This document shows, piece after piece, positions 1-24,135 of a stretch of 39,267 nt of DNA (its first letter is position 1; each line of letters starts with the position of its first letter). The stretch is from Azolla caroliniana. Its lineage: Eukaryota; Plantae; Polypodiophyta. The stretch spans positions 1 to 39,267 of the forward strand of contig JBHGNT010000287.1 of assembly GCA_043228905.1 (NCBI GenBank). Reading direction: 5' to 3'. Under the pieces are notes generated by a model that was given only the letters and a program-made list of their open reading frames with translations, did not search any database and was not told the origin of the DNA. The position numbers and the translations under genes were made by a program.

Positions 1-2532
1 ATCAGAGATATCAAGGGTCGAGGTGTTACGAATGTTTCGCTTCCTCTTCCTACCTCCCCTTCTTGTTTGGCATTCAATCATCTCCAATGTATACTTACCT
101 GTAAAAGCATTTGCACTTCTAGTGTTGTACCAATGAACATTTATAGACTTGATCGTGTTTTCTATTTCATGCATTAGCACTTCTAGAATTTTACCAACCC
201 AAAATTGGTGGCCATGTGAGTTCTCATCAGCCGGCGTTGCAATCAACATCCCCGCGGTGAGCTCTTGCAAATTTCCTTGCCATCTAGCTTCGGCTGCTTT
301 GGTCATCCTTGGTCCCACATAAATGTCTCTTTGTTGTGGATGGACCAAGTTGTCATTAATCGCATTTACTAGTCGCTCCGGACTTCTATTTACGCGATCA
401 TGTTGCAGCGACCATGTGAATGGCGTTTCCAAATTCCAATTATCAACAGATACACAATTGTCTATAATTTCTTTCTTATCACTATAAAATACATCCCACC
501 ATGACGTGTCTTGTTGTGCGGCATATTTCTTGGCGGCCTCAATATGCTTTCTTTTTTCTTCTAAGGCTTGGAGCCATGACCGTTTTTGTTCTGATACCAA
601 GTCGCTCTGCAACTGTCCTTTCTTCTCAATTGGCATTTGCTTAGCTCCATGGACAATTGTACTCGGCATACAAAGTAATAACTGGCAACCACCTTCAGGT
701 TCCCATGTTGTAGAAGATGAATATTGTTTAGCATACAAAAGTGTAGAACCACTTATTCCATTTTTCTTTATCAAAAAAATGTGATTGAAACTTATATTGT
801 TTAACTGAGCAAGCACTTTAACATTCCCACCACCCCCATCTAATATATATCTCTTAAAGTCATATACCTCCTTAAAGTGTAACACTTTTGGGCGTGGTGT
901 ATATGCATCACAAATGACATCAAATAGTTTAGGTAAAGTGAAAGCATCATGCCGAGACAACTGTCTAGAGAATGTGCTAAACATCTGATCTATATGGTCA
1001 TGTGTGTGGCCAACCAAAAGGAAATTGACTTTCACTTTCCTAAACAATTCTAGGTTGACCAACATACTTAGATAGCCAAATACAGTTGAATTTTTGTTCT
1101 CTCTAGCAGTATTGTCCAATTGAATGTATAGAACAGGGGGGAAAGGTTGTCCCCAAGACATCAAAACTTGGTGAATCACTGTAACTGTTAGGTTAGGGTC
1201 ATTGTGAACATTGGGGTAAGTAATGAAGACGTGAGGTCGAACAGACCTATTATAAGCCAAGCATCCCACCAAGTGCATTTGAACAAGGCACTCATCATTG
1301 ACATCTTTGGGGAGCCTCCGCATATGCGGCAAGCATGTCTTCTTCTGGTCCATGCCATCTATCATTAAGCACATGTATTGTTCAGGCCTCTTCAAACACT
1401 TCTCTCTATGATGCATCGCCTTCCTTCGTTCTAAGGATTGTGCCTCACGATGCTCTTGTAGTAACTTCTTACTCGTATCCTTTTCCATTGATGTCTTTGC
1501 ACCTTTAGCCAAACTTTTAAGATTTGCACAAATGGAGCAATACCCCATACGTACTTTACGAGGAATAATAACATTTGAAAACCGAGCTCTCCATAATCTT
1601 GTGAATTGGCTGTAGGTGATAGACTTATTACGTGAGCCCAGCATTTCAGATCGATAGACATCATAAACTTCCCGACGGGTATAATTATCAGAAAGATGCA
1701 TCCTACCTGTAGTGGGCATTACTTCACAATTTAACTGAAAGTAAGTTTTCATCCAGCCAATAGCTAGTCTTCCAATTGCACCTTTCATACTTGGAACCTC
1801 TTTACAATTGAGCATCTGATCCCCGCTAAGTAGACGTTGTTGTACTCTATGTAGCCGCATGTTACTAACACATAACGCAATTTTGAATGCAACTCTACAT
1901 ATCTGTTGCGCATGGAAGATATAATACTCGAATGATACTTTGATCCCCGTACATTTGTCAGATACTAGTTGCATATGTGATCCGAGGTAAGTGTCTTGCT
2001 CATCACCGATCATCGAAAAATAGTATCGCCTTAATTCTCGCAACTTTGATTTTCCAATCATAGACATACAACCACGGGCACAACATATTTTGTTGACATC
2101 AAATCCAATCTGTTTATCTGATGTCACCAAGCTAAATCTAGCCAGACGAATTCTTCGTGGGATTCTTCTAATATGCATAGGGCTCCCAGATTTCTCTTCC
2201 TGCATAGAGGTTGGTGTAACCTTGTTACAGTCTAATTCTCTGTTGTGACCATCGCCAATGTTATTCAATGTTTCCCGGGCACTTCCTTCATTCTCGGTAT
2301 CTTTATTAATATCGTATTCTTCAATAGAGAACTCTTCACATGTGTCATTATTTACATTCCCTGTAGATGAGCTCAGACAATATTCTTCGATAGAATATGG
2401 TGAGTCGGTCGACAGACAATATTCTTCAATCGAATATGGTGACTCTGTTGACAAACAATACTCTTCAGTAGAAAACGATGGGTCTGATGACAAACAATAT
2501 TCTTCAATCGAGAACGGTGAATCTTCACTCAT
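1..2532 (-). CDS. Sola1-like / DUF7869-type DDD transposase, intact ORF of at least 844 aa, 3' end outside window
   Basis: Manual translation from ATG at 2532 is open to base 1 (MSEDSPFSIEEYCLS...STLDISD). Motifs: ICCARGC, QICRVAF, GYCSIC, then LMIDGMDQKKTCLPH (D392), LYIQLDNTARENKN (D473), FLLVGHTHDHIDQMFS (D515). C-terminal FWVGKILEV...INVHWY segment and basic RRGGRKRKR. Family assignment is from motif recognition only. Confidence 0.8.
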   Translation of the reverse strand, partial: MSEDSPFSIEEYCLSSDPSFSTEEYCLSTESPYSIEEYCLSTDSPYSIEEYCLSSSTGNVNNDTCEEFSIEEYDINKDTENEGSARETLNNIGDGHNRELDCNKVTPTSMQEEKSGSPMHIRRIPRRIRLARFSLVTSDKQIGFDVNKICCARGCMSMIGKSKLRELRRYYFSMIGDEQDTYLGSHMQLVSDKCTGIKVSFEYYIFHAQQICRVAFKIALCVSNMRLHRVQQRLLSGDQMLNCKEVPSMKGAIGRLAIGWMKTYFQLNCEVMPTTGRMHLSDNYTRREVYDVYRSEMLGSRNKSITYSQFTRLWRARFSNVIIPRKVRMGYCSICANLKSLAKGAKTSMEKDTSKKLLQEHREAQSLERRKAMHHREKCLKRPEQYMCLMIDGMDQKKTCLPHMRRLPKDVNDECLVQMHLVGCLAYNRSVRPHVFITYPNVHNDPNLTVTVIHQVLMSWGQPFPPVLYIQLDNTARENKNSTVFGYLSMLVNLELFRKVKVNFLLVGHTHDHIDQMFSTFSRQLSRHDAFTLPKLFDVICDAYTPRPKVLHFKEVYDFKRYILDGGGGNVKVLAQLNNISFNHIFLIKKNGISGSTLLYAKQYSSSTTWEPEGGCQLLLCMPSTIVHGAKQMPIEKKGQLQSDLVSEQKRSWLQALEEKRKHIEAAKKYAAQQDTSWWDVFYSDKKEIIDNCVSVDNWNLETPFTWSLQHDRVNRSPERLVNAINDNLVHPQQRDIYVGPRMTKAAEARWQGNLQELTAGMLIATPADENSHGHQFWVGKILEVLMHEIENTIKSINVHWYNTRSANAFTGKYTLEMIECQTRRGGRKRKRNIRNTSTLDISD
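2371..2520 (-). repeat. 39-bp (13-aa) coding tandem repeat, 4 copies, at the transposase N-terminus
   Basis: ACAATA(T/C)TCTTC recurs at 2377, 2416, 2455 and 2494. It translates as S(I/T)EEYCLS-based units, with a degenerate fifth copy FSIEEYDI near 2310-2335. Confidence 0.9.
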
Positions 2533-3187
2533 GGCTTAAGGTCTAGATAGGGCTCTCTAAGTTATACTCCTCTCTAAACATATACTCCTCCCTAAACATA
2601 AACTTCTCTCTAAACAAAAGCCAAATCAATAGAATGTCTATATTATGTAATATTCTATTAATACAATACATCTAAAAATTATTTTTAATAAAGTAATTGT
2701 ACTTAAATTATCAATCATTATATAAACTAGATCTAAATGATGTTAAATCAAGTAAAATATAAAACTAATCATTAACAAGCCATGAATATGTTGGATTAAT
2801 GTTAAAATCATTGGCTAATTAATGGCACCCATTTTGATATAGAACGTCTCACGCATTGGTTCTTTAATGCTCACCATTTTAAATATTAGACTTATCAATC
2901 ATTGGTTAATTCATGCCCACATCTTTAATACATAACATTTGAGAGTCATAAAAATTGTTGCTTTTAGTAATCAATCATTGGTACATTCATGAACCTCTAT
3001 CATTGTCTCCTTCATAACCTTTGAAGTCATTGTAGGTTGTTATGACTATAAAAGATTGATCAATATGTTAGTTTGACTTTGTAATCATTAATACAATCAT
3101 AAGTTACTCTAGTTAATGTGACTATGGTTACCCACTAACTATCCTCAAAGTTACCAACCTTGGTTAAGGTGACTATGGTTACTTTAA

Positions 3188-3212
3188 CCAATGTGTTCAA
3201 TCCCTATAAATA
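3188..3212 (+). promoter_or_regulatory. Putative CCAAT + TATA promoter, divergent from the transposase
   Basis: CCAAT at 3188-3192 and TATAAATA at 3205-3212, followed by a CA-rich leader and ACCATG (ATG at 3356). Confidence 0.35.
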
Positions 3213-3238
3213 GGAAGACCTCGTCATATTTCACTCAC

Positions 3239-3325
3239 CAGAGCGTACAGAGCGTACAGAGCACACAGAACGTAGAGAGCACACAAAGCACACAAAGCGC
3301 TCAGAGCACAAAGCACGAAAGCGCA
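3239..3325 (+). repeat. Degenerate 9-bp tandem repeat (CAGAGCACA-like)
   Basis: cagagcgta cagagcgta cagagcaca cagaacgta gagagcaca caaagcaca caaagcgct cagagcaca... Confidence 0.8.
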
Positions 3326-3440
3326 ATCTCCGCCTCCACTTCAACACGATCAACCATGTCTTCAAAGAGAATCGAGCGCGAGGACTCCAGGTAGGCCTCT
3401 GACACTGTGGACATTTTTGTAAATATGTTTCGTTTCTCAA

Positions 3441-4087
3441 GAACTCGATACGCCGTATCGAGTTCATGTATACAATACAAATATTTATACACGAACTCGA
3501 TACGGCGTATCGAGTTCGTGTTTAAAGTGTAGGTTTCAAAAAGAATCTCGATACGCCGTATCGAGTTCGTGTTTAAAACCTACACTTTAAACACGAACTC
3601 GATACGCCGTATCGAGTTCGTGTTTAAAGTTTGAATTTTAAAAAGGAACTCGATACGCCGTATCGAGTTCCTATTTATAGTGTAGGTTTTAAACACGAAC
3701 TCGATACGGCGTATCGAGTTCGTGTTTAAAACCTACACTTTAAACAAGAACTCGATACGGCGTATCGAGTTCGTGTTTAAAACCTACACTTTAAACAAGA
3801 ACTCGATACGGCGTATCGAGTTCGTGTTTAAAACCTACACTTTAAACAGGAACTCGATACGCCGTATCGAGTTCCTGTTTAAAGTGTAGGATCGAGTTCC
3901 TGTTTAAAGTGTAGGTTTTAAACACGAACTCGATACGCCGTATCGAGTTCCTGTTTAAAGTGTAGGTCTTAAACACGAACTCGATACGGCGTATCGAGTT
4001 CCTATTTAAAATTCAAACTTTAAACACGAACTCGATACGGCGTATCGAGTTCCTGTTTAAAGTGTAGGTTTTAAACACGAACTCGAT
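3441..4087. repeat. Array of 12 complete and 2 partial palindromes GAACTCGATACG-S-CGTATCGAGTTC, ~51-bp period, with self-complementary 26-bp linkers
   Basis: Palindromes start at 3441, 3493, 3543 (1-nt insertion), 3595, 3646, 3697, 3748, 3799, 3850, 3926, 3977 and 4028; partial copies at 3891 and 4079. Linker consensus is GTGTTTAAA-N8-TTTAAACAC. Confidence 0.97.
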
Positions 4088-7000
4088 TGAATGGGAAGCT
4101 CATTGCAAAAGGAAAACGACAAGGAAGAATGTTTATTTTGGATGTTGACATGCCTAGACAGATTTCAGCTATGTTTGCAAATGGAATGAGTGTAGTCTCA
4201 GATGTGGAAATGTGGCATAAAAGGATTGGCCACATAAGTATGCAAACCCTAAAGAATATGTTGAGAAAAGATGCAGTGGCTGGACTACCAAAACTGAAAA
4301 ATTGTGAAATGGGAAAGATATGTGAAGCATGTCAATATGGAAAGCAAAATAGGTTGCCATTCCCTCATGAAAGACATGTAAGTAAAAATTTGTTGGATTT
4401 GGTACATACGGATGTATGGGGACCAACTAAGAATGCATCTATCGGTGGCTGCAGATTTTATGTAACTTTTATTGATGATTGCTCAAGGAAAACATGGGTG
4501 TACTTCATGAAAGAGAAAAGTGAAGTGTTTGAATGTTTTCGTAAGTTTTAATGCATGGTAGAAAAGCAGGCAGGTACAAGAATAAAATGTTTAAGATTTG
4601 ATGGAGGAGGAGAGTATTTCTCCAATGAATTTTCTGATTTTCTATGCAATCAGGGAATAAGAAGACAGTTCACATGTAGATATACTCCACAGCAAAATGG
4701 AGTTGCTGAGAGGAAAAACAGAACATTGGTGAACATTGCAAGGGCTTTGATGACAGAGAAGAATATGCCATTGTACTATTGGGCAGAAGCTGTAAATACA
4801 GCAAATTATATTCTAAATAGATGTATAACATCGGGAGTACATGAAGCAACTCCTGAAGAGTGTTTCTATGGAAGGAAACCTAGTATAGAACACTTAAAAG
4901 TGTTTGGATGCCTTGCATATGTACATGTGCCTGCAGAAGTAAGAAGTAAGCTGGATCCAAAGGCAGAAAAATGTATTTTTGTTGGCTATTCAGAAGAACA
5001 AAAAGGGTATAGATGCTATAACCCTGTAACAAAGAAGATTGTGACAAGTAGGGATGTAATCTTTGATGAGTTAGTCAGCTGGTATAGTCCAAAACAGAAT
5101 CCAGAGACTGATGAAGACAATGAGATTGAAGACAAAGACAAATCTGAAAATGTAGAAGACTGCCACAGAGATGGAAGCAAGGTTGGACAGCAAAGTCCAA
5201 CATCAACAGAATGTTCTGGACCATCAAAAAGCTTAGATGGTAAATCTGATTCAAATTCTTGGAGTGGAAAAAGTGGAGGACACAAAAAATGTGATGATAA
5301 AAAAGGAAAACAGAAAATGCCAAAGTATGAAATGTTGGATGACTTGTCTAAAAACATGGAAGATGAGGATTCAGATGTGTCATTGGATGATCTTCTTGGT
5401 ATAAGAGGATTGAAAATCCCTGGTATGGAAAAAGCATTGAAGGATGCAAATCAGAAACTGAGAAGATCAGATAGAGAGAAAAAAACTGTTGAAAGATTTG
5501 GTTATGATACATACATGGCTATGCATTATGCATACATGTCTAAGGTGGTACAGATCCCTGATCCAAGTAGTTTTGATGAGGCTAAAACTGAGAAGAAATG
5601 GGTGGACACAATGCAAGAAGAGATTGATGCATTGGCTGAAAACAGAACATGGGATTTGGTGAAGTTACCAAAAGAAAAAAATGTGGTAGGTTGCAAATGG
5701 GTCTACAAGACAAAGCATGATTCCAGTGGGAATGTAAGTAGACATAAAGCAAGATTGGTTGCAAAGGGATATGCCCAAATGCAAGGAATTGATTATGATG
5801 AGACATTTGCACCGGTTGCAAAGATGGCAACATTGAGGACATTACTGGCTGTAGGTGCAGCCAGAAGATGGTTTCTCCATCATATGGATGTAAAAAATGC
5901 CTTTTTACATGGTAACTTGGAAGAAGAAGTGTATATGTGTCAACCACCAGGTTTTGAAGATAGGAAGCATCCAGATTATGTATGTAAGCTGAAAAAGGCT
6001 CTCTATGGACTGAAACAGGCACCAAGAACATGGCACAGAGAACTTTCAGATTATCTGAAAAAACTTGACTTCAAAATGTCAAAGGCTGATTCATCATTGT
6101 ATGTTAAAAGGAAAGATGATTGTATGGTTGTGATTCTGATTTATGTTGATGATCTCATCATTGGAGGTGATTTCATGGATGAGATAAGTAAGCTGAAAAG
6201 AAATTTGGAAATGAAATTTCATATGAAAGATTTGGGAGATCTGAGATATTTTTTGGGTATTGAAATCATCAGATCTGAAAGTGGTATATGTGTGTTGCAA
6301 AGACAATATGCAACAACTATGTTGAAAAAGTATGGTATGCTTGGATGCAAACCTATTGGAGTACCACTAGATAAAAACTGCAAATTGAGGGCTGATTTGG
6401 GAGCCAAAATAGAAGATGTAAACATGTACAGGTCTATGGTGGGCAGCCTTATTTATTTGACCATAACAAGACCTGATTTGAGTTATGCAGTTGGATTAGT
6501 CAGCCAATTTATGCAACAACCAACAAAGCCGCATTTGGACTGCATTAGAAGAATTCTGAGGTATGTAAAAGCTACTCAGAACTATGGATTGTTTTACAGG
6601 GCTGATTTGGACATAAATCTGGAAGGATATACAGATGCTGATTGGGCTGGAAGCCAAACAGATAGAAGATCCACAAGTGGATATATCTTTACATTGGGAA
6701 GTGCAGGTATTTCATGGAGTAGCAAGAAACAAGCTATTGTTGCATTGTCTAGTACTGAAGCTGAGTACAGAGGAGCTGCCATAGCCACTTGTGAAGAGGT
6801 ATGGATTAGAAGATTGCTTGCTGATTTGGGAGAGTATATAGAAGGTACTGTCACAATCTGGTGTGACAACATGAGCAGCATTCAACTTGCAAAGAACCCT
6901 GTGTTCAATGCAAGAACAAAGCACATTGAAGTGCATTATCACTTTGTTAGAGAAAAAGTGATTGAAGGAGAAGTTGATCTGGTGTATGTGAATACAAATC

Positions 7001-7143
7001 AGCAGGTTGCTGATATTCTCACAAAGGGATTGAGTGTGGAAAAGCATACACAGTTTCGGAACATGATGGGAGTTGTAGACATTGATATGATGGTTGAAAA
7101 GCATCATGAAAAAGAAGTTGTAGATAACCCCAAGAAAGGATAA
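4087..7143 (+). pseudogene. Copia pol (integrase, RT, RNase H) with one in-frame stop at 4549-4551
   Basis: WHKRIGH...CEACQYGK, VHTDVWGP, TPQQNGVAERKNR, MDVKNAFLHG, LYGLKQAPR, IYVDDL, YTDADWAG, RTKHIEVHYHF. ORFs 4087-4551 and 4555-7143 are in the same frame. Confidence 0.95.
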
Positions 7144-7161
7144 GTTGAGCTTGAGGGGGAG

Positions 7162-7707
7162 TGTTGAGAAGCAAGCTCAACATGGTATGCGATGCTTATT
7201 GGGAAATAAGCTATAGTAGTTATTTAGCTACTTGTGAACATAAAGGAGAAACAGCTAATTAGCTACTGACAGCTAATTAGCTACTGACAGCTATTTAGCG
7301 ACTGACAGCTATTTAGCTACTGACAGCTATTTAGCTACTGACAGCTATTTAGCGACTGATAGCTAATTAGCTACAGGCAGCTAATTAGCTGCATACGTAA
7401 GTAACTTATTACTTAGGTAGAAAGTAAGAGAGTAAGAAAAAAGAAGAAGAAGATATACAGGAAATAGAACTCTGAGAGAGAGATAGTGAGTATAGAGAAA
7501 AAGAACTCAGAGAGTGAGAGCAAGAGAGAGAAACAAACGAGAGCAAGTAGAGCTCTGCGCATAATGAAATAGAAGAAGTTTTGGTTGCTACAGAGGTAAG
7601 TCTCCTTCCCCCTTCCCTTCTGTGTTTGAGCACTAAACGATCTAGCACACCACGATCCGCCGCGCACATAAGAAGAGCTCGAGTGCCTTCTTCACGTTTT
7701 ATTAACA
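7162..7707 (+). repeat. 3' LTR of Copia A, including an 18-bp tandem repeat (AGCTACTGACAGCTA(A/T)TT) at ~7252-7390
   Basis: TG start directly after the PPT. The right end is inferred from TTAACA matching TGTTGA imperfectly; there is no second LTR to confirm it. Confidence 0.65.
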
Positions 7708-8364
7708 AGGGCTACGGCAACAAAGGGAGAAGAGGCCAACGCGGAGGTCGGGACTACGGCGGGAGAAGCGTGTAACACGAAGCATGCATTACGGCGTAAA
7801 ACGGAGCATGCACTATGGCCGGCGAAGGGCCAAGAAGCAAGCATGCAGCCGGAAGGGCGGTAACGAGTGACCGACAACGGCGGACCGGTCGAGCCTTTGA
7901 GAGGCAAGCACGTTGCAAGAGACAGAGCGGTGAGTTGCCGGGATCGGCAGATGAACGATGAAAGCGGAGGATGGTGCGCGGAGAGCAAAGAGTTATGCAC
8001 CGGGGAGAGAAAAAGCGGCGTCTCGGAGGACGTGCGGGGCCAAGCGGGCCAAGAGGATGCGAGTCGGGATGAAGCGGTAACGAGAGCCGTGAAGAACCCC
8101 GACACGAAGGTCGGGATGACAATACGCTCTACTACGAGAGAGCACGGAGAGCAAGGGAGAATTGAGGTGCGCGTAATGGGGTCACCTAAGGACCAAAGAA
8201 TGAGCGTGCATTCGGGGGAGCTACAACGAGTGACCGACGATGACGGTCGGAGGAAGCCTTTGAGAGGCAAGCACGGGACGACGGACGGTGCAGCGAGACG
8301 CCAAGATCTGACGGGAACTCAACGCTCCTTATGTGCAACGTTCGGCCACAACTAGAAGTTAGAA

Positions 8365-9330
8365 TGATACACAGAAAGCGGGAAATGAAACACGACACAA
8401 AGAAGAGGAAGATATACAGGAGGTTTACGTGGAAAATCCCAAACTAGGGGAAAAAACCACGGCAGCCCACAGGCTGCAAATTATCACTATGTTGGAATGT
8501 ACAAACAGTGAGTTCACGGAGGCAACGACCTCGTGCTCACGATCTTCGCCACAGACGGCGGTTACAACAGAGGCAACGACCTCTTTCTCTCTCTCTGTAT
8601 AGTTACACACTCTCTCTTTTCTTGCACCAACAAGAAATGACAACAACTACTAAAAGTTTGCCCTAAGTCATATTTATACTAATATGAATTTTCGGCTATT
8701 TACAAATATAGCCTCGATGGACTCTCAGAAACATATTTACGAATATGTCTCTTCATCCGGTTCATACTGGGTCTGCACCATCCGGCTCTCCGAAGCCGGG
8801 TACTCCTCATCCGGTTCATATCGGGTCTGCACCATCCGGCTCTCCGTAGCCGGGTACTCCTCATCCGGTTCATACCGGGTCTGCACCATCCGGCTCTCCG
8901 AAGCCGGGTACTCCTCATCCGGTTCATACCGGGTCTGCACCATCCGGAGGGACCTGTCTCCCAACAAACTCCCCCTTCACTCCGGCATGGGGTGTCTTAC
9001 CAGTCCGATCCTCTTCCGACATGCGTCCAACTTGTCGGGTGTCAGCACTTTGGTCAACATATCTGACCCGTTCTCGACCGTGTGGATCTTCGTCAGTGCG
9101 AACTCCTGGTCATCTACTCTTTCCCGGATCCAGTGATACCTCCGCTGGATATGCTTCGTCCGGGAATGGTAGGCCGCATTCTTAGCAAGGTGGATGGCAC
9201 TTTGACTGTCGCAATAGAGTCGGTATTCCTCTTGCCGGATACCGAGCTCTCCGATGAAGTCCTTCATCCATAATATTTCTTTGCCGGCTTCCACAGCCGC
9301 CATGTACTCCGCCTCTGTGGTTGACAAACC
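8365..9330 (-). mobile_element. Tnt1-like Copia B remnant: RNase H end, PPT and 3' LTR
   Basis: LSTTEAEYMAAVEAGKEILW...HSRTKHIQRRYHWIRE...SDMLTK, stop at 8977, PPT AAGGGGGAG, LTR starting TGTTGGGAG at 8966 and probably ending ...GTATCA at 8365. Confidence 0.88.
8753..8947. repeat. 54-bp tandem repeat, ~3.6 copies, in U3 of the Copia B LTR
   Basis: TCATCCGGTTCATAyyGGGTCTGCACCATCCGGCTCTCCGwAGCCGGGTACTCC repeated; it explains the 18-aa periodic ORFs in three frames. Confidence 0.95.
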
Positions 9331-10792: not shown

Positions 10793-11074
10793 TGTTCTTG
10801 TGTGCAATAAGTCTAATAGTGCTTTTGGGAAATAACAACATACGTGTTCATACATTATACACAAGGGTGGGGAATTTATATAGTAACCCCAAATAGCACC
10901 CTCTACATATTCAAACTTAAAAGTTGTTTTGTTTGTTCTTGTGTGCAATAAGTCTAATAGTGCTTTTGGGAAATAACAACATACGTGTTCATACATTATA
11001 CACAAGGGTGGGGAATTTATATAGTAACCCCAAATAGCACCCTCTACATATTCAAACTTAAAAGTTATTTTGTT
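10793..11074. repeat. Near-perfect 141-bp tandem duplication
   Basis: TGTTCTTGTGTGCAATAAGTC...AAAGTT(G/A)TTTTGTT at 10793-10933 and 10934-11074. Confidence 0.95.
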
Positions 11075-12017
11075 TTCACATTACCTCTTTAGATAGTCAT
11101 TTTCAGATACCAATGAATACTTGTGCAAGCACATGTTAAGGCTTGACGCCATGATAAGAGAATACTTGAGATTTTATATTTTTTATGAAAATCACATAAT
11201 AACTTTTGGGTGCTCATGATATAGACCATTGGATACAATAAAAACCCCAGCAAAACACATTATTTTTAGATATTTCAACAGATAATTGCTGTTTTTATAA
11301 TATTTTTCTTAAATGTTAAATCTTGACTACATGCATAAACAAGAGGTCATTCATTAATTAGCTTTTGAATTGGTCTTAATAGCTTAGAGAAATACTAAAT
11401 TTGCAAGACAACATTATAATTGGTCTCTACTAATTAAAAAAATATTCAGCTTTTTTAGTAGATATTGCAATTAGTTGGAAAACAAATGTTGTAGGTTTAT
11501 GCCACTGTTTAATCTATAGCAACAAAGAACAAGGGTACGATAGTGGCATCATCAAGTTCCACAAATCTCTTCATTCTTATGTATTTTTTTGGATTTTAAC
11601 CAGCACATGCATATGCTGATAATTTTCTAATGTCAATTATCATTACAATTTCTAACATTACATGTTCTATTAGCACTCACAATCTTCATATCACTAGTAT
11701 ATACAACATTAGATGCTCCAACATTCCTCAAGAATAGAGAACATTCAACCAAGGTTTGCCAATCATTCATTCCCACTTCGGTTTGATGTTTGCGAGGACT
11801 CCACAAACAATTAACATACGTCACATTGAACTAACTACAAATGCAAATATTATGATCACATGGTCTACAGCGTACGCCCTTTAATTTATTCAAACGTTTC
11901 AGAACATTATCCATATGTTCATTATTGAATAGAAGATGCAAAACATATACAACAGCCATCATATTAAGGGTATACCTATTATACCCTGCTGATATTTGAA
12001 AATATATTGGTGATCCT

Positions 12018-21730: not shown

Positions 21731-21793
21731 GTCCTTCATATCTAGCCTTATAGAAAGCCTTAAGCTTGACCTTGAAATACAAGATGTTTAGCT

Positions 21794-22280
21794 ATAGAAG
21801 AGAGGAATTTGAAACTGGTGAAAATTCAGAAACCATTCTGTAGAGAGTGTAGAATCCTCTGGTAATAGCAGAAAAAATAGAGAATAGTTGGATCACAATT
21901 ATCCATAGAGAAGACAGCAATTTGAAACCAACCTTGAAATTAAGAAACTTTAGAGAAGAAACATTTCAGCTGAGATGCGTAGATTATAGAAATGGCAGAG
22001 CTAGCCTTTATAGAAGAGAGGAATTTGAAACTGGTGAAAATTCAGAAACCGTTCTGCAGAGAGGGTAATCCTCTGCAAATAGCAGAAAAAATAGAGAACG
22101 GCTGGATCACAACTATCCATAGAGAAGACAGCAATTTGAAACTGGCCTTGAAATTAAGAAACTTTAGAAAAAAACATTTCATCTGAGATGCGTAGATTAT
22201 TCTAGAAGTGGCAGAAACTTCATTCAGCCTTGAAATTAAGAAACTATTTCAGCTGAGATGCGTAGATTATTCTAGAAACG
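21794..22280. repeat. ~216-bp tandem duplication plus partial third copy
   Basis: TATAGAAGAGAGGAATTTGAAACTGGTGAAAATTCAGAAACC...CTGAGATGCGTAGATTAT at ~21794 and ~22009; its tail repeats again at ~22228-22278. Confidence 0.9.
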
Positions 22281-23560: not shown

Positions 23561-23576
23561 TTCACACAGGCGCAGC

Positions 23577-24135
23577 CTCTCTCTCTAGACTCTCTTTCTA
23601 GACACACACACACTGCCTCTCTCTCTCTAGACTCTCTTTCTAGACACACAAACACACACTACCTCTCTGTCTCTCTCTAGATATACACACACACTCTCTC
23701 TCTCTCTAGACTCTCTTTCTAGACACACACACACACTGCCTCTCTGTCTCTCTCTAGATATACACACCCACTCTGTCTCTCTCTAGACACAAACTCTCTC
23801 TTTTTCTCTATCTTTTTACGCCTATCATCATTACTCTTACCTATCATTTATTGAAGTTGTCACTTCACACGCACAGGCATTCTAGAGAGAGGATGTGCAT
23901 GTGGAGAAAACAGCGGAGGCATTCTAGAGAGAGGATGTGCATGTGACGAAATAGCACATGCATTCTAGAGAGAGGATGTGCATGTGGACAAACCAGGAGA
24001 TCCCGTCCCAAGAGGCATTTTCATTCTAGAGAGTGCATGTGTATGTACATATGTATGTGGAAGAAAAAGGGTGGCCCTGTCCAACAAGATAATAGAGAGC
24101 GGATGTGGATTCTAGAGAGCGGATGTGCATGCGGA
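23577..24135. repeat. Compound (CT)n/(CA)n/TCTAGA microsatellite and 42-bp-period repeat GCATTCTAGAGAGAGGATGTGCATGTG, in the probable promoter region
   Basis: Directly visible at 23577-23810; repeat copies at ~23877, 23919 and 23961, with degenerate copies out to 24135. Confidence 0.85.

What the first reader, a model, noticed from the sequence alone, without database searches (positions are those of the whole stretch)
3441..4087. Doubly palindromic 51-bp array of loxP/FRT-like units with flippable 8-bp cores, beside an intact transposase
Seen: the array has two symmetry centres per period. Re-framed, each unit is CGTATCGAGTTCGTGTTTAAA-[8 bp]-TTTAAACACGAACTCGATACG, i.e. 21-bp inverted arms around an asymmetric 8-bp core, with units joined by a single C or G. 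Apart from the divergent first linker, only two cores are used and each occurs in both orientations: ACCTACAC/GTGTAGGT and GTTTGAAT/ATTCAAAC. The order is R,F,B,R,F,F,F,(R),R,R,B',R, and the joining base also switches between C and G. Known: inverted arms around an 8-bp directional spacer is the architecture of loxP and FRT sites, and some DNA transposons carry subterminal arrays of transposase-binding sites. Inference: this is a cis-acting module of the neighbouring Sola-like element (binding, synapsis or cleavage platform) whose units are inverted and shuffled. Simple slippage would not flip orientation. This is the best candidate here for an undescribed system.
Basis: partly seen in the sequence, partly recalled or inferred. 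Interest (0 to 1): 0.88.

Follow-up and report, generated by a model that had tools for sequence, protein, structure and literature searches.

The report
Palindrome array of a truncated fern transposon
The repeat is real, but it is not a lox-like switch: it is the family-specific array of a 23-bp palindrome found between the two genes of a known kind of plant and algal cut-and-paste transposon, here in a broken copy, and its flipped units look like by-products of palindrome-driven rearrangement.

Summary
Positions 3438-4087 carry 12 copies of a 23-bp palindrome, mostly 51 bp apart. The intervening segments lie in both orientations and the centre base is C or G.

The lox/FRT reading does not hold.
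- Any tandem array of a palindrome has a second symmetry centre, so the double symmetry is automatic.
The outer arms, the 8-bp "cores" and the spacing all vary.
- No recombinase is encoded here or in relatives.
- The unit order follows from one recent 197-bp inverted duplication (98% identical outside one segment), one 26-bp inversion between neighbouring palindromes, a tandem run and a 26-bp deletion.

The array does belong to the neighbouring element, a DUF7869 (Sola1-like) transposon. In relatives from ferns to a liverwort and a green alga, lineage-specific palindromes lie between the transposase and a divergent accessory gene, which carries a DNA-methyltransferase domain in the fern and liverwort loci. 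This copy lacks that gene and the left end: it breaks inside the last palindrome and joins a 5'-truncated copia element.

The palindromes are most likely binding sites for an element-encoded protein. This scan has reported the same family and its arrays on other DNA of this genome.

The parts
1..2532 (-). Open reading frame of a DUF7869 (Sola1-like) DDE transposase. The ATG is at 2532-2530 and 845 codons are open; it runs off the window start, so about 82 C-terminal residues are missing from the window.
   Evidence: Translation. Pfam PF25273, E 2.5e-51. 86% identical over residues 1-847 of the 929-aa P0002. Homologues in ferns, Riccia, Chara and Cymbomonas.
2377..2508 (-). 39-bp tandem repeats that encode a 13-residue repeated motif at the transposase N-terminus.
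   Evidence: TRF. The repeats are kept in P0002 and in L003.
2533..3437 (-). Leader or upstream region between the transposase ATG and the array.
   Evidence: Alignable only to the closest relatives L003, L041 and L038. It is not alignable to the relatives with 74-76% identical transposases, although the palindrome is identical there.
3438..4087 (.). Array of 12 copies of the 23-bp palindrome (11-nt half-site, centre C or G, 11-nt half-site). In this lineage the palindrome extends to about 43 bp and is separated by 8-bp asymmetric spacers. The period is 51 bp. The array ends in a truncated half-site at 4080-4087.
3560..3756 (.). Left arm of a recent inverted duplication inside the array (units 3-6).
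   Evidence: 197 nt with 14 mismatches to the reverse complement of 3891-4087.
3891..4087 (.). Right arm of the inverted duplication (units 9b-12). It mirrors the cores and centre bases of the left arm, including B and B'.
3671..3696 (.). 26-bp segment between two neighbouring palindromes (unit 5). Either it or its mirror partner in unit 10 was inverted after the duplication.
   Evidence: 11 of the 14 mismatches between the two arms fall here, and the rest is 98% identical. Units 5 and 10 compared directly differ at only 3 of 50 positions.
3866..3915 (.). Two identical 25-bp copies. This partial unit is what remains after 26 bp were lost from one period, and it causes the single 76-bp spacing.
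   Evidence: TRF: period 25, 2.0 copies, 100%. Unit 9 is 75 bp long.
4087..4089 (.). Breakpoint. The last palindrome stops 3 nt short of its centre and copia sequence begins. The rest of the transposon (accessory gene, left inverted repeat) is absent.
   Evidence: Sequence. tblastn with the accessory exons finds nothing in the window. Other copia copies continue differently upstream of 4089-4090 (loose end and contig pieces).
4088..7143 (+). 5'-truncated Ty1/copia polyprotein (gag-pre-integrase, integrase SH3-like domain, RVT_2). It is not part of the transposon.
   Evidence: Pfam PF13976, PF25597 and PF07727. ORFs.

Best explanation
The array is the internal palindrome array of a DUF7869 (Sola1-like) cut-and-paste transposon. 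In complete relatives this array lies in the region between the transposase gene and a divergently transcribed accessory gene. That gene has a DNA amino-methyltransferase domain and, according to the literature on a brown-alga element, a ParB-like domain.

I read it as a binding site for a dimer of an element-encoded protein. In the fern lineages the sites are mostly spaced in whole helical turns (31, 41 or 51 bp), so that many dimers could sit on one face of the DNA.

Of the two candidates I favour the ParB-like methyltransferase loading at these sites (about 40%) over the transposase using them as an internal enhancer or operator (about 30%). That step is inferred, not shown.

The 8-bp 'cores' are spacers. 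Their two orientations, and the C/G centre base, record rearrangements that such DNA undergoes without any dedicated enzyme. Each inter-palindrome segment is flanked by inverted arms of at least 12 bp. It can therefore be inverted by hairpin-mediated template switching or recombination, and whole blocks can be duplicated in inverted order.

This copy is defective. It breaks inside the last palindrome and is fused to the interior of a copia element.
For: Shown:
1. The same 23-bp palindrome is repeated upstream of the transposase in L001, L002, L006 and L009, with single or few copies in L003 and L007 (one mismatch in L007). These loci were found through the protein only (74-90% identity). Spacers and periods differ, and the surrounding non-coding DNA is otherwise unalignable beyond the closest relatives.
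2. More distant relatives carry a different palindrome at the same place. Ceratopteris L004/L005 are at 56-59% identity, with one of the Ceratopteris arrays in an intron of the accessory gene. Riccia L008 (35%) has its sites dispersed and subterminal. L043 is at about 35-40%. Cymbomonas L047 and L044-46 are at 29-33%.
3. A divergent gene homologous to the accessory exon lies on the other side of the array in L001, L003, L004, L005, L006, L008, L043 and L047. PF01555 or methyltransferase-exon matches were seen in six of these, not in L003 or L047.
4. Of 33 contigs found by the palindrome alone, 25 have transposase or accessory hits, and where both genes are present (L016, L040) they flank the array divergently.
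5. Inverted-repeat-bounded derivatives without genes (L014, L017, L031; L036 is cut by the contig end) keep 1-3 exact palindromes, while the rest of their sequence is 66-78% identical to L006.
6. Spacing classes in ferns cluster on multiples of about 10.4 bp (R 0.68, p about 0.001).
7. Inverted duplication plus one 26-bp inversion. Spacers in both orientations also occur in relatives' arrays, with the same order in independent assemblies.

Literature: a Sola1 element of Ectocarpus carries a ParB-like plus methyltransferase gene on the strand opposite the transposase (PMC12477816). Small inversions of 4-50 bp facilitated by hairpins are pervasive in plastid DNA (PMC12371153).
Against: - No binding, methylation or transposition data exist. 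Which protein binds, if any, is inference.
- I could not confirm the ParB-like domain. Pfam, PHROGs, NCBIfam and PDB profile searches gave nothing significant. The language-model search gave DUF3723 at 0.97 and ParB_N only at 0.90. The AlphaFold model was too poor to use (pLDDT 50).
- The terminal inverted repeat does not resemble the palindrome.
- Helical phasing fails in the green-alga arrays (periods 67-72), and p rises to about 0.02 when every spacing class is included. The classes are not independent.
- Conservation in loci L010-L042 is partly by construction, because they were fetched with the exact palindrome.
- Concerted evolution of a tandem repeat could mimic part of the conservation within a lineage.
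- The exact unit order at this locus is unverified by reads.
Confidence: 0.62

Rival explanations
1. The palindromes are internal transposase-binding sites. They would act as a transposition enhancer or an autoregulatory operator between the two divergent promoters, in the manner of the phage Mu internal enhancer or the En/Spm TnpA sites. They would not be landing sites of the accessory protein.
For: - Gene-less, inverted-repeat-bounded derivatives keep exact palindromes.
- A related palindrome (GATAC, 2 nt, GTATC) is conserved 115-130 bp from the right end in L001, L002, L003 and L006, with a one-mismatch variant in L007, and a similar one lies about 260 bp past the transposase stop in L005.
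- In Riccia the palindromes also lie 250-400 bp from both ends.
- Earlier unchecked notes of this scan say that Sola2 elements with a different accessory gene also carry palindrome arrays.
Against: - In fern elements the array is central, 4-5 kb from either end (L006).
- The palindrome is unrelated to the terminal inverted repeat that the transposase must bind.
- In Ceratopteris a second array lies in an intron of the accessory gene.
- Every relative examined also carries the accessory gene, so the two candidates cannot be separated by co-occurrence.
Confidence: 0.3
2. One reading: each unit is a lox/FRT-like recombination site whose 8-bp core is flipped by a site-specific enzyme of the element, so the array is a programmable or shuffled switch.
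For: The form fits: 21-bp inverted arms around an asymmetric 8-bp core, with both orientations present.
Against: - No tyrosine or serine recombinase is encoded in the window or in any related element.
- The outer arms and cores are the variable parts across lineages.
- The arm marker flips with the core.
- Most of the order comes from one inverted duplication.
- Flipped spacers in relatives are old, diverged and fixed across independent samples.
- From general knowledge, Cre and Flp invert DNA between two sites, not the spacer within a site.
Confidence: 0.03
3. The array has no protein-binding role. It would be a self-propagating palindromic satellite that happens to live in this transposon family, kept uniform by concerted evolution, or a host-factor or promoter element.
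For: - Tandem repeats are common in transposon non-coding regions.
- Copy number, spacing and orientation are very fluid.
- Some spacers in L041 contain a plant telomere-like word.
Against: - The 23-bp palindrome is identical across lineages whose transposase coding DNA is only 75% identical and whose neighbouring non-coding DNA is unalignable.
- The position is kept, with the palindrome replaced, from ferns to a green alga.
- Isolated single palindromes are retained in gene-less derivatives, where concerted evolution of an array cannot act.
Confidence: 0.12
4. The unit order at this locus, or the junction with copia, is an assembly artefact of a palindromic repeat.
For: No public contig bridges 4087, and all the data laid were short contigs of a high-copy repeat. 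Fold-back contigs do seem to occur in short-read assemblies of relatives (L037, L041).
Against: The two inverted blocks differ at 14 positions, including a clean 26-bp inversion, and a fold-back artefact would make them identical. Arrays of the same build occur in many independent assemblies.
Confidence: 0.05

Closest known systems
[quoted passage not shown]
   Same: The transposase type is probably the same, although this rests on the earlier notes and the shared layout and was not tested against Repbase. The fern and liverwort relatives of this copy also share a divergent accessory gene with a PF01555 methyltransferase domain on the opposite strand.
   Different: The paper does not mention palindrome arrays (0 occurrences of 'palindrom'). 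This window's copy lacks the accessory gene and one end. These are land-plant members of about 9 kb, against 21.5 kb for the alga element.
En/Spm (CACTA) TnpA-binding motifs and other subterminal transposase-site arrays
   Same: A short element-specific motif is repeated in direct and inverted orientation, and the inverted pairs are suited to dimer binding (own knowledge of Gierl and colleagues' work; not checked here).
   Different: Here the sites are full 23-bp palindromes in a central array 4-5 kb from the ends. They are not within a few hundred bp of the terminal repeats, and they are unrelated to those repeats.
Bacterial parS/ParB centromere sites
   Same: Clustered palindromic sites lie next to a gene said to encode a ParB-type domain. 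A central position would let a spreading or sliding protein cover the whole 9-kb element.
   Different: The palindrome is 23 bp with an odd centre, against 16 bp for parS (own knowledge). ParB likeness of the accessory protein was not confirmed here. No partition function is expected in a nuclear transposon.
loxP / FRT sites
   Same: Inverted arms flank an asymmetric 8-bp spacer.
   Different: There is no recombinase, and the arms and spacer are the variable parts. The resemblance follows automatically from repeating a long palindrome every 51 bp.
Hairpin-associated small inversions of plastid non-coding DNA (Kelchner and Wendel 1996, as cited in PMC12371153)
   Same: A short segment (here 26 bp) flanked by inverted repeats is inverted without any dedicated enzyme.
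   Different: This is nuclear transposon DNA, and the stems here are the binding-site palindromes of an array.

Membership tests
loxP/FRT-type recombination site | Inverted arms flanking a short asymmetric spacer | tested here: met
   21-bp arms with an 8-bp core in units 2-12. This is an automatic consequence of tandem palindromes.
loxP/FRT-type recombination site | A cognate tyrosine recombinase encoded with or near the sites | tested here: not met
   Pfam on the window's ORFs and on the relatives' genes shows only a DDE transposase, a methyltransferase and retroelement proteins.
loxP/FRT-type recombination site | The arms are the conserved, protein-binding part of the site | tested here: not met
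   Positions 12-21 of the arms and the cores vary between lineages. Only the 11 nt next to the 'joining base' are invariant.
Sola1-like transposon with methyltransferase accessory gene | DUF7869-type DDE transposase | tested here: met
   PF25273, E 2.5e-51. Assignment to Sola1 in the Repbase sense could not be tested.
Sola1-like transposon with methyltransferase accessory gene | Divergent accessory gene with a DNA amino-methyltransferase domain | tested here: not met
   Absent from the window. Methyltransferase matches are present in L001, L004, L005, L006, L008 and L043. The window copy is therefore a truncated member.
Sola1-like transposon with methyltransferase accessory gene | Terminal inverted repeats and a short target duplication | tested here: inconclusive
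   34-bp repeats bound L006 (4-38 and 8789-8823) and gene-less relatives. Ceratopteris L004 is flanked by ATCT on both sides, but it sits inside a microsatellite. Neither end of this copy is in the window.
Sola1-like transposon with methyltransferase accessory gene | ParB-like domain in the accessory protein | tested here: inconclusive
   No Pfam, PDB, PHROG or NCBIfam match. Atlas gave ParB_N at 0.90 and DUF3723 at 0.97. The model had pLDDT 50. The claim rests on PMC12477816 for the alga element.
Subterminal transposase-binding repeat arrays (En/Spm type) | Motif copies lie within a few hundred bp of the element's ends | tested here: not met
   In L006 the array is at 4778-5134 of an element spanning 4-8823. 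Only Riccia has subterminal copies.
Subterminal transposase-binding repeat arrays (En/Spm type) | The motif is bound by the transposase | not testable with these tools
   Needs EMSA or DAP-seq.
parS-like loading sites | Palindromic sites clustered beside the gene of the binding protein | tested here: met
   The array begins 300-550 bp upstream of the accessory gene in L001, L004 and L006.
parS-like loading sites | Specific binding and spreading of the ParB-type protein | not testable with these tools
   Needs binding assays, or methylation calls from native long reads.

The most novel reading that the evidence does not exclude
The palindrome arrays are loading sites for the element's own ParB-like DNA amino-methyltransferase. 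The protein would spread from the centre of the element and mark the whole transposon, including gene-less relatives that keep a few sites. That would be a self-addressed DNA-marking system carried by a eukaryotic transposon from green algae to ferns.
Probability: 0.3. Interest if true: 0.75.

Novelty: new member of a known kind. Interest (0 to 1): 0.3.

Why it matters
On its own this locus is a dead, truncated copy, and the lox-like switch idea falls away.

What remains of value belongs to the family. A transposon lineage has kept three things together from a green alga to ferns: a transposase, a divergent accessory gene (methyltransferase-bearing in the land-plant loci), and arrays of a lineage-specific palindrome between them. 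Gene-less derivatives still keep the palindrome.

The papers I could search describe the gene pair but not the arrays. The arrays give a concrete DNA target for testing what the accessory protein does. This scan had already noted the family and its arrays elsewhere in this genome, so this report adds detail rather than a new kind of system. The added detail is which symmetry centre is conserved, the retention of the palindrome in gene-less copies, and how the flips arose.

Tried and rejected
- Read support. The only holders were short Logan contigs of a repeat at depths in the hundreds to thousands. None bridges the 4087 junction or orders the units, so the locus-level assembly stays unverified.
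- ParB likeness of the accessory protein. Pfam, PDB profile, PHROGs and NCBIfam gave nothing usable. The AlphaFold model from a 4-sequence alignment had pLDDT 50, so I ran no fold search on it.
- Separating the two candidate binders by looking for relatives without the accessory gene. This failed. L043 and Cymbomonas L047 also carry it, and L044-46 are too short upstream to tell.
- A link between the palindrome and the terminal inverted repeat. They share only short words (for example AACACG with the outer arm of this lineage), which I do not count as evidence.
- Helical phasing as a general rule. It holds for the fern periods but not for the green-alga arrays.
- Large inverted duplications centred on the array in L037 and L041. 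I do not use them as evidence, because short-read assemblers can fold back at palindromes.

Full report
**What is there**

Positions 3438-4087 hold a tandem array (TRF scores 515-663 at periods 51, 102 and 153). A 23-bp palindrome occurs 12 times, against 0 expected in 100 shuffles. It consists of an 11-nt half-site, a centre base C or G, and the complementary half-site. The centres are 51 bp apart, apart from one 52-bp step and one 76-bp step.

**Why the array has two symmetry centres**

A palindrome equals its own reverse complement. When it is repeated in tandem, the copies on either side of any spacer are inverted repeats of each other. In this lineage the palindrome extends to about 43 bp (arms of 21-35 nt) and is repeated every 51 bp, which leaves 8 bp between copies. 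The look of "21-bp inverted arms around an 8-bp core" follows automatically. The real question is which centre matters.

**Comparative evidence on which centre matters**

The minus-strand ORF 2532-1 is a DUF7869 transposase (PF25273, E 2.5e-51). It is 86% identical to the 929-aa protein P0002 and is open for all 845 codons that lie in the window. I fetched loci through homologues of this protein, so they were chosen without reference to the repeat.

- In L001, L002, L006 and L009 (transposase 74-85% identical) the same 23-bp palindrome is repeated upstream of the transposase. L003 (90%) holds one full copy (one mismatch) plus a half-site, and L007 one copy with a mismatch.
- Its surroundings differ. 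Spacers are 28, 18, 17, 9 or 50 nt, and the flanking words differ between lineages.
- Between these lineages the coding DNA is about 75% identical, and the other non-coding DNA does not align at all.
- Per-position conservation drops sharply after the eleventh base from the centre. Loci L010-L042 were fetched with the exact palindrome, so only the protein-derived loci count as independent here.

**More distant relatives**

These keep the arrangement but carry other palindromes.

- Ceratopteris L004 and L005 (56-59% identical transposase) have a related 23-bp palindrome. In L004 it forms 31-bp arrays, one in the intergenic region and one in an intron of the neighbouring gene.
- Riccia L008 (35%) has a 20-22-bp palindrome dispersed through the element, including 250-400 bp from both ends.
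- L043 has a third palindrome.
- Cymbomonas L047 and the metagenome loci L044-46 (29-33%) have arrays of yet another palindrome at periods 66-72.

**The element and the state of this copy**

In L001, L003, L004, L005, L006, L008, L043 and L047 a divergently oriented gene lies on the other side of the array. PF01555 or methyltransferase-exon matches were seen in six of these, but not in L003 or L047.

L006 holds a complete element. Its 34-bp terminal inverted repeats lie at 4-38 and 8789-8823, and the array is at 4778-5134, in the middle of the element. The Ceratopteris copy spans about 9.5 kb inside a TATC microsatellite.

An Ectocarpus paper describes the same gene pair in a Sola1 element. 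It calls the accessory protein ParB-like plus methyltransferase, and it does not mention palindromes (PMC12477816).

In the window the accessory gene is absent. The array stops 3 nt short of the centre of its last palindrome at 4087, and the interior of a Ty1/copia polyprotein follows. Other copies of that copia family continue differently upstream of 4089-4090. The transposase ORF is open, but the element has lost its accessory gene and its left end.

**Does the array travel with the element?**

A scan of metagenome contigs for the exact palindrome returned 33 contigs, all from one series of assemblies.

- 25 of them carry tblastn matches to the transposase and/or the accessory gene.
- Where both genes are present they lie in the expected divergent arrangement (for example L016 and L040).
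- The remaining contigs are short or belong to gene-less elements.
- Inverted-repeat-bounded derivatives of about 3-3.5 kb (L014, L017, L031; L036 is cut by the contig end) have lost nearly all coding sequence. They keep one to three exact palindromes, while the rest of their DNA is only 66-78% identical to L006.

The array is a family trait, and it seems to be kept even where no gene needs regulating.

**How the flips arose**

Three asymmetric markers can be read in each period: the centre base, position 13 of the arm, and the core. The arm marker flips together with the core. What is inverted is therefore the whole segment between two palindromes, not the 8-bp core alone.

- Block 3560-3756 is the reverse complement of block 3891-4087, with 14 mismatches in 197 nt.
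- Eleven of these mismatches lie within 3671-3696. Outside that stretch the blocks are 98% identical, and the centre bases and the rare B/B' cores mirror each other perfectly.
- Units 5 and 10, which should be mirror images, are instead nearly identical when compared directly (3 differences in 50).

The order of units is thus explained by four events:
- one recent inverted duplication of four units;
- one inversion of a 26-bp segment bounded by the 12-bp inverted arms of neighbouring palindromes;
- a tandem run (units 6-8);
- one 26-bp loss that left the 25-bp doublet at 3866-3915.

Spacers in both orientations are also common in relatives' arrays. There they are older and diverged, and the same order recurs in independent assemblies (L001, L002, L027, L040). 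Hairpin-associated small inversions of 4-50 bp are well known from plastid DNA (PMC12371153). No recombinase gene is present in the window or in the related elements. None of this points to a dedicated inversion system.

**What the palindromes probably do (inferred)**

Several features together fit a binding site for a dimeric, element-encoded protein: an invariant palindrome with 11-nt half-sites, many copies, a conserved position, lineage-specific replacement, and retention in gene-less derivatives.

In the fern lineages the dominant centre-to-centre spacings are 31, 41 and 51 bp, with 32, 40 and 73 also seen. These cluster on multiples of about 10.4 bp (R 0.68, p about 0.001). Sites would then face the same side of the helix. 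This is only moderate evidence. The green-alga arrays have periods of 66-72, p rises to about 0.02 when all classes are pooled, and the classes are not independent.

Two candidates remain.

- For the accessory protein: the central position, from which a spreading ParB-type protein could cover the whole 9-kb element; a second array inside the accessory gene's intron in Ceratopteris; and co-inheritance down to a green alga.
- For the transposase: retention in gene-less copies; subterminal palindromes in Riccia; and a related small palindrome conserved 115-130 bp from the right end in L001, L002, L003 and L006, with variants in L007 and L005.

I put the accessory protein at about 40% and the transposase at about 30%, with the remainder on host factors or no binding role. 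I could not confirm the ParB-like fold myself. I also found no relative without the accessory gene that would separate the two.

**Limits**

Public data for this organism were short contigs of a very abundant repeat. They show that the units occur in many arrangements across copies (alternative joints). They cannot confirm the order or the copia junction at this locus.

The palindromic contigs L037 and L041, where the array sits at the centre of a larger inverted duplication, may be assembler fold-backs, so I did not use them as evidence.

**Relation to earlier work of this scan**

Earlier notes on other DNA of this genome already describe this transposon family with its methyltransferase gene and palindrome arrays, and they point to the 2025 brown-alga paper. 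I checked that paper and the gene layout myself.

This report adds four points:
- the lox-like form is geometric;
- the flips have a simple rearrangement history;
- gene-less derivatives keep the palindrome.

**Verdict**

This is a real feature and an ordinary, defective member of a known transposon kind. The proposed recombination-site mechanism is not supported. Interest is low to moderate for the locus and higher for the untested family-level question of what binds the arrays.

Noticed in passing
window 7251-7390: Just after the copia polyprotein stop there are 7.8 tandem copies of an 18-bp unit containing the 12-bp palindrome AGCTAATTAGCT. This is a second, unrelated palindrome array, inside a retroelement's 3' region.
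   Followed up: no
window 2377-2508 (minus strand): 39-bp repeats encode a 13-residue motif (SIEEYCLS-like) repeated about five times at the transposase N-terminus. The motif is kept in the 86%-identical P0002, so it is probably a functional repeat domain.
   Followed up: partly
L001 10847-10866, L002 4010-4029, L003 4692-4711, L006 8706-8725, L007 3668-3687, L005 12319-12338: A small palindrome (TGATAC, 2 nt, GTATCA) is conserved in group A relatives 115-130 bp from the right end of the element (with one mismatch in L007). A similar one lies about 260 bp past the transposase stop in L005, where the element end is not defined. It shares the GATAC/GTATC core with the array palindrome but has a centre one base shorter.
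   Followed up: partly
L014 3100-3330: In a gene-less derivative, two palindromes sit at the centre of a larger inverted repeat of about 230 bp. Its arms contain a tRNA-like GGTTCGAGTCC word.
   Followed up: no
L041 9189-10259 and L037 606-1242: The array lies at the centre of a larger inverted duplication of its transposase-side flank. This is either a real fold-back rearrangement or a short-read assembler artefact at palindromes.
   Followed up: partly
L041 9526-9650: Some 28-nt spacers contain the plant telomere-like word AAACCCTAA or its complement. Related G-rich cores occur in L038, L011 and L012. The window's cores look like diverged versions of these.
   Followed up: no
L047 8102-8526 and 10125-10977; L044 1-229; L045 742-1037; L046 4-104: Cymbomonas and three metagenome contigs share arrays of one 20-38-bp palindrome (core CGTTCATTAGCTAATGAACG) at periods of about 66-72, upstream of a DUF7869 transposase that is only 29-33% identical to the window's.
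   Followed up: partly
L008 4043-4063 and 15055-15075: Perfect 21-bp terminal inverted repeats bound an 11-kb Riccia element that lies between two ion-channel gene models.
   Followed up: no
window 8749-8947, 10793-11075, 21793-22200, 23576-23996: Other tandem repeats lie in this transposon-rich window: 54 bp x 3.7 at 95%, 141 bp x 2 at 99%, 214 bp x 1.9, and CT/CA-rich arrays. The rest of the window holds further copia and gypsy-type fragments.
   Followed up: no
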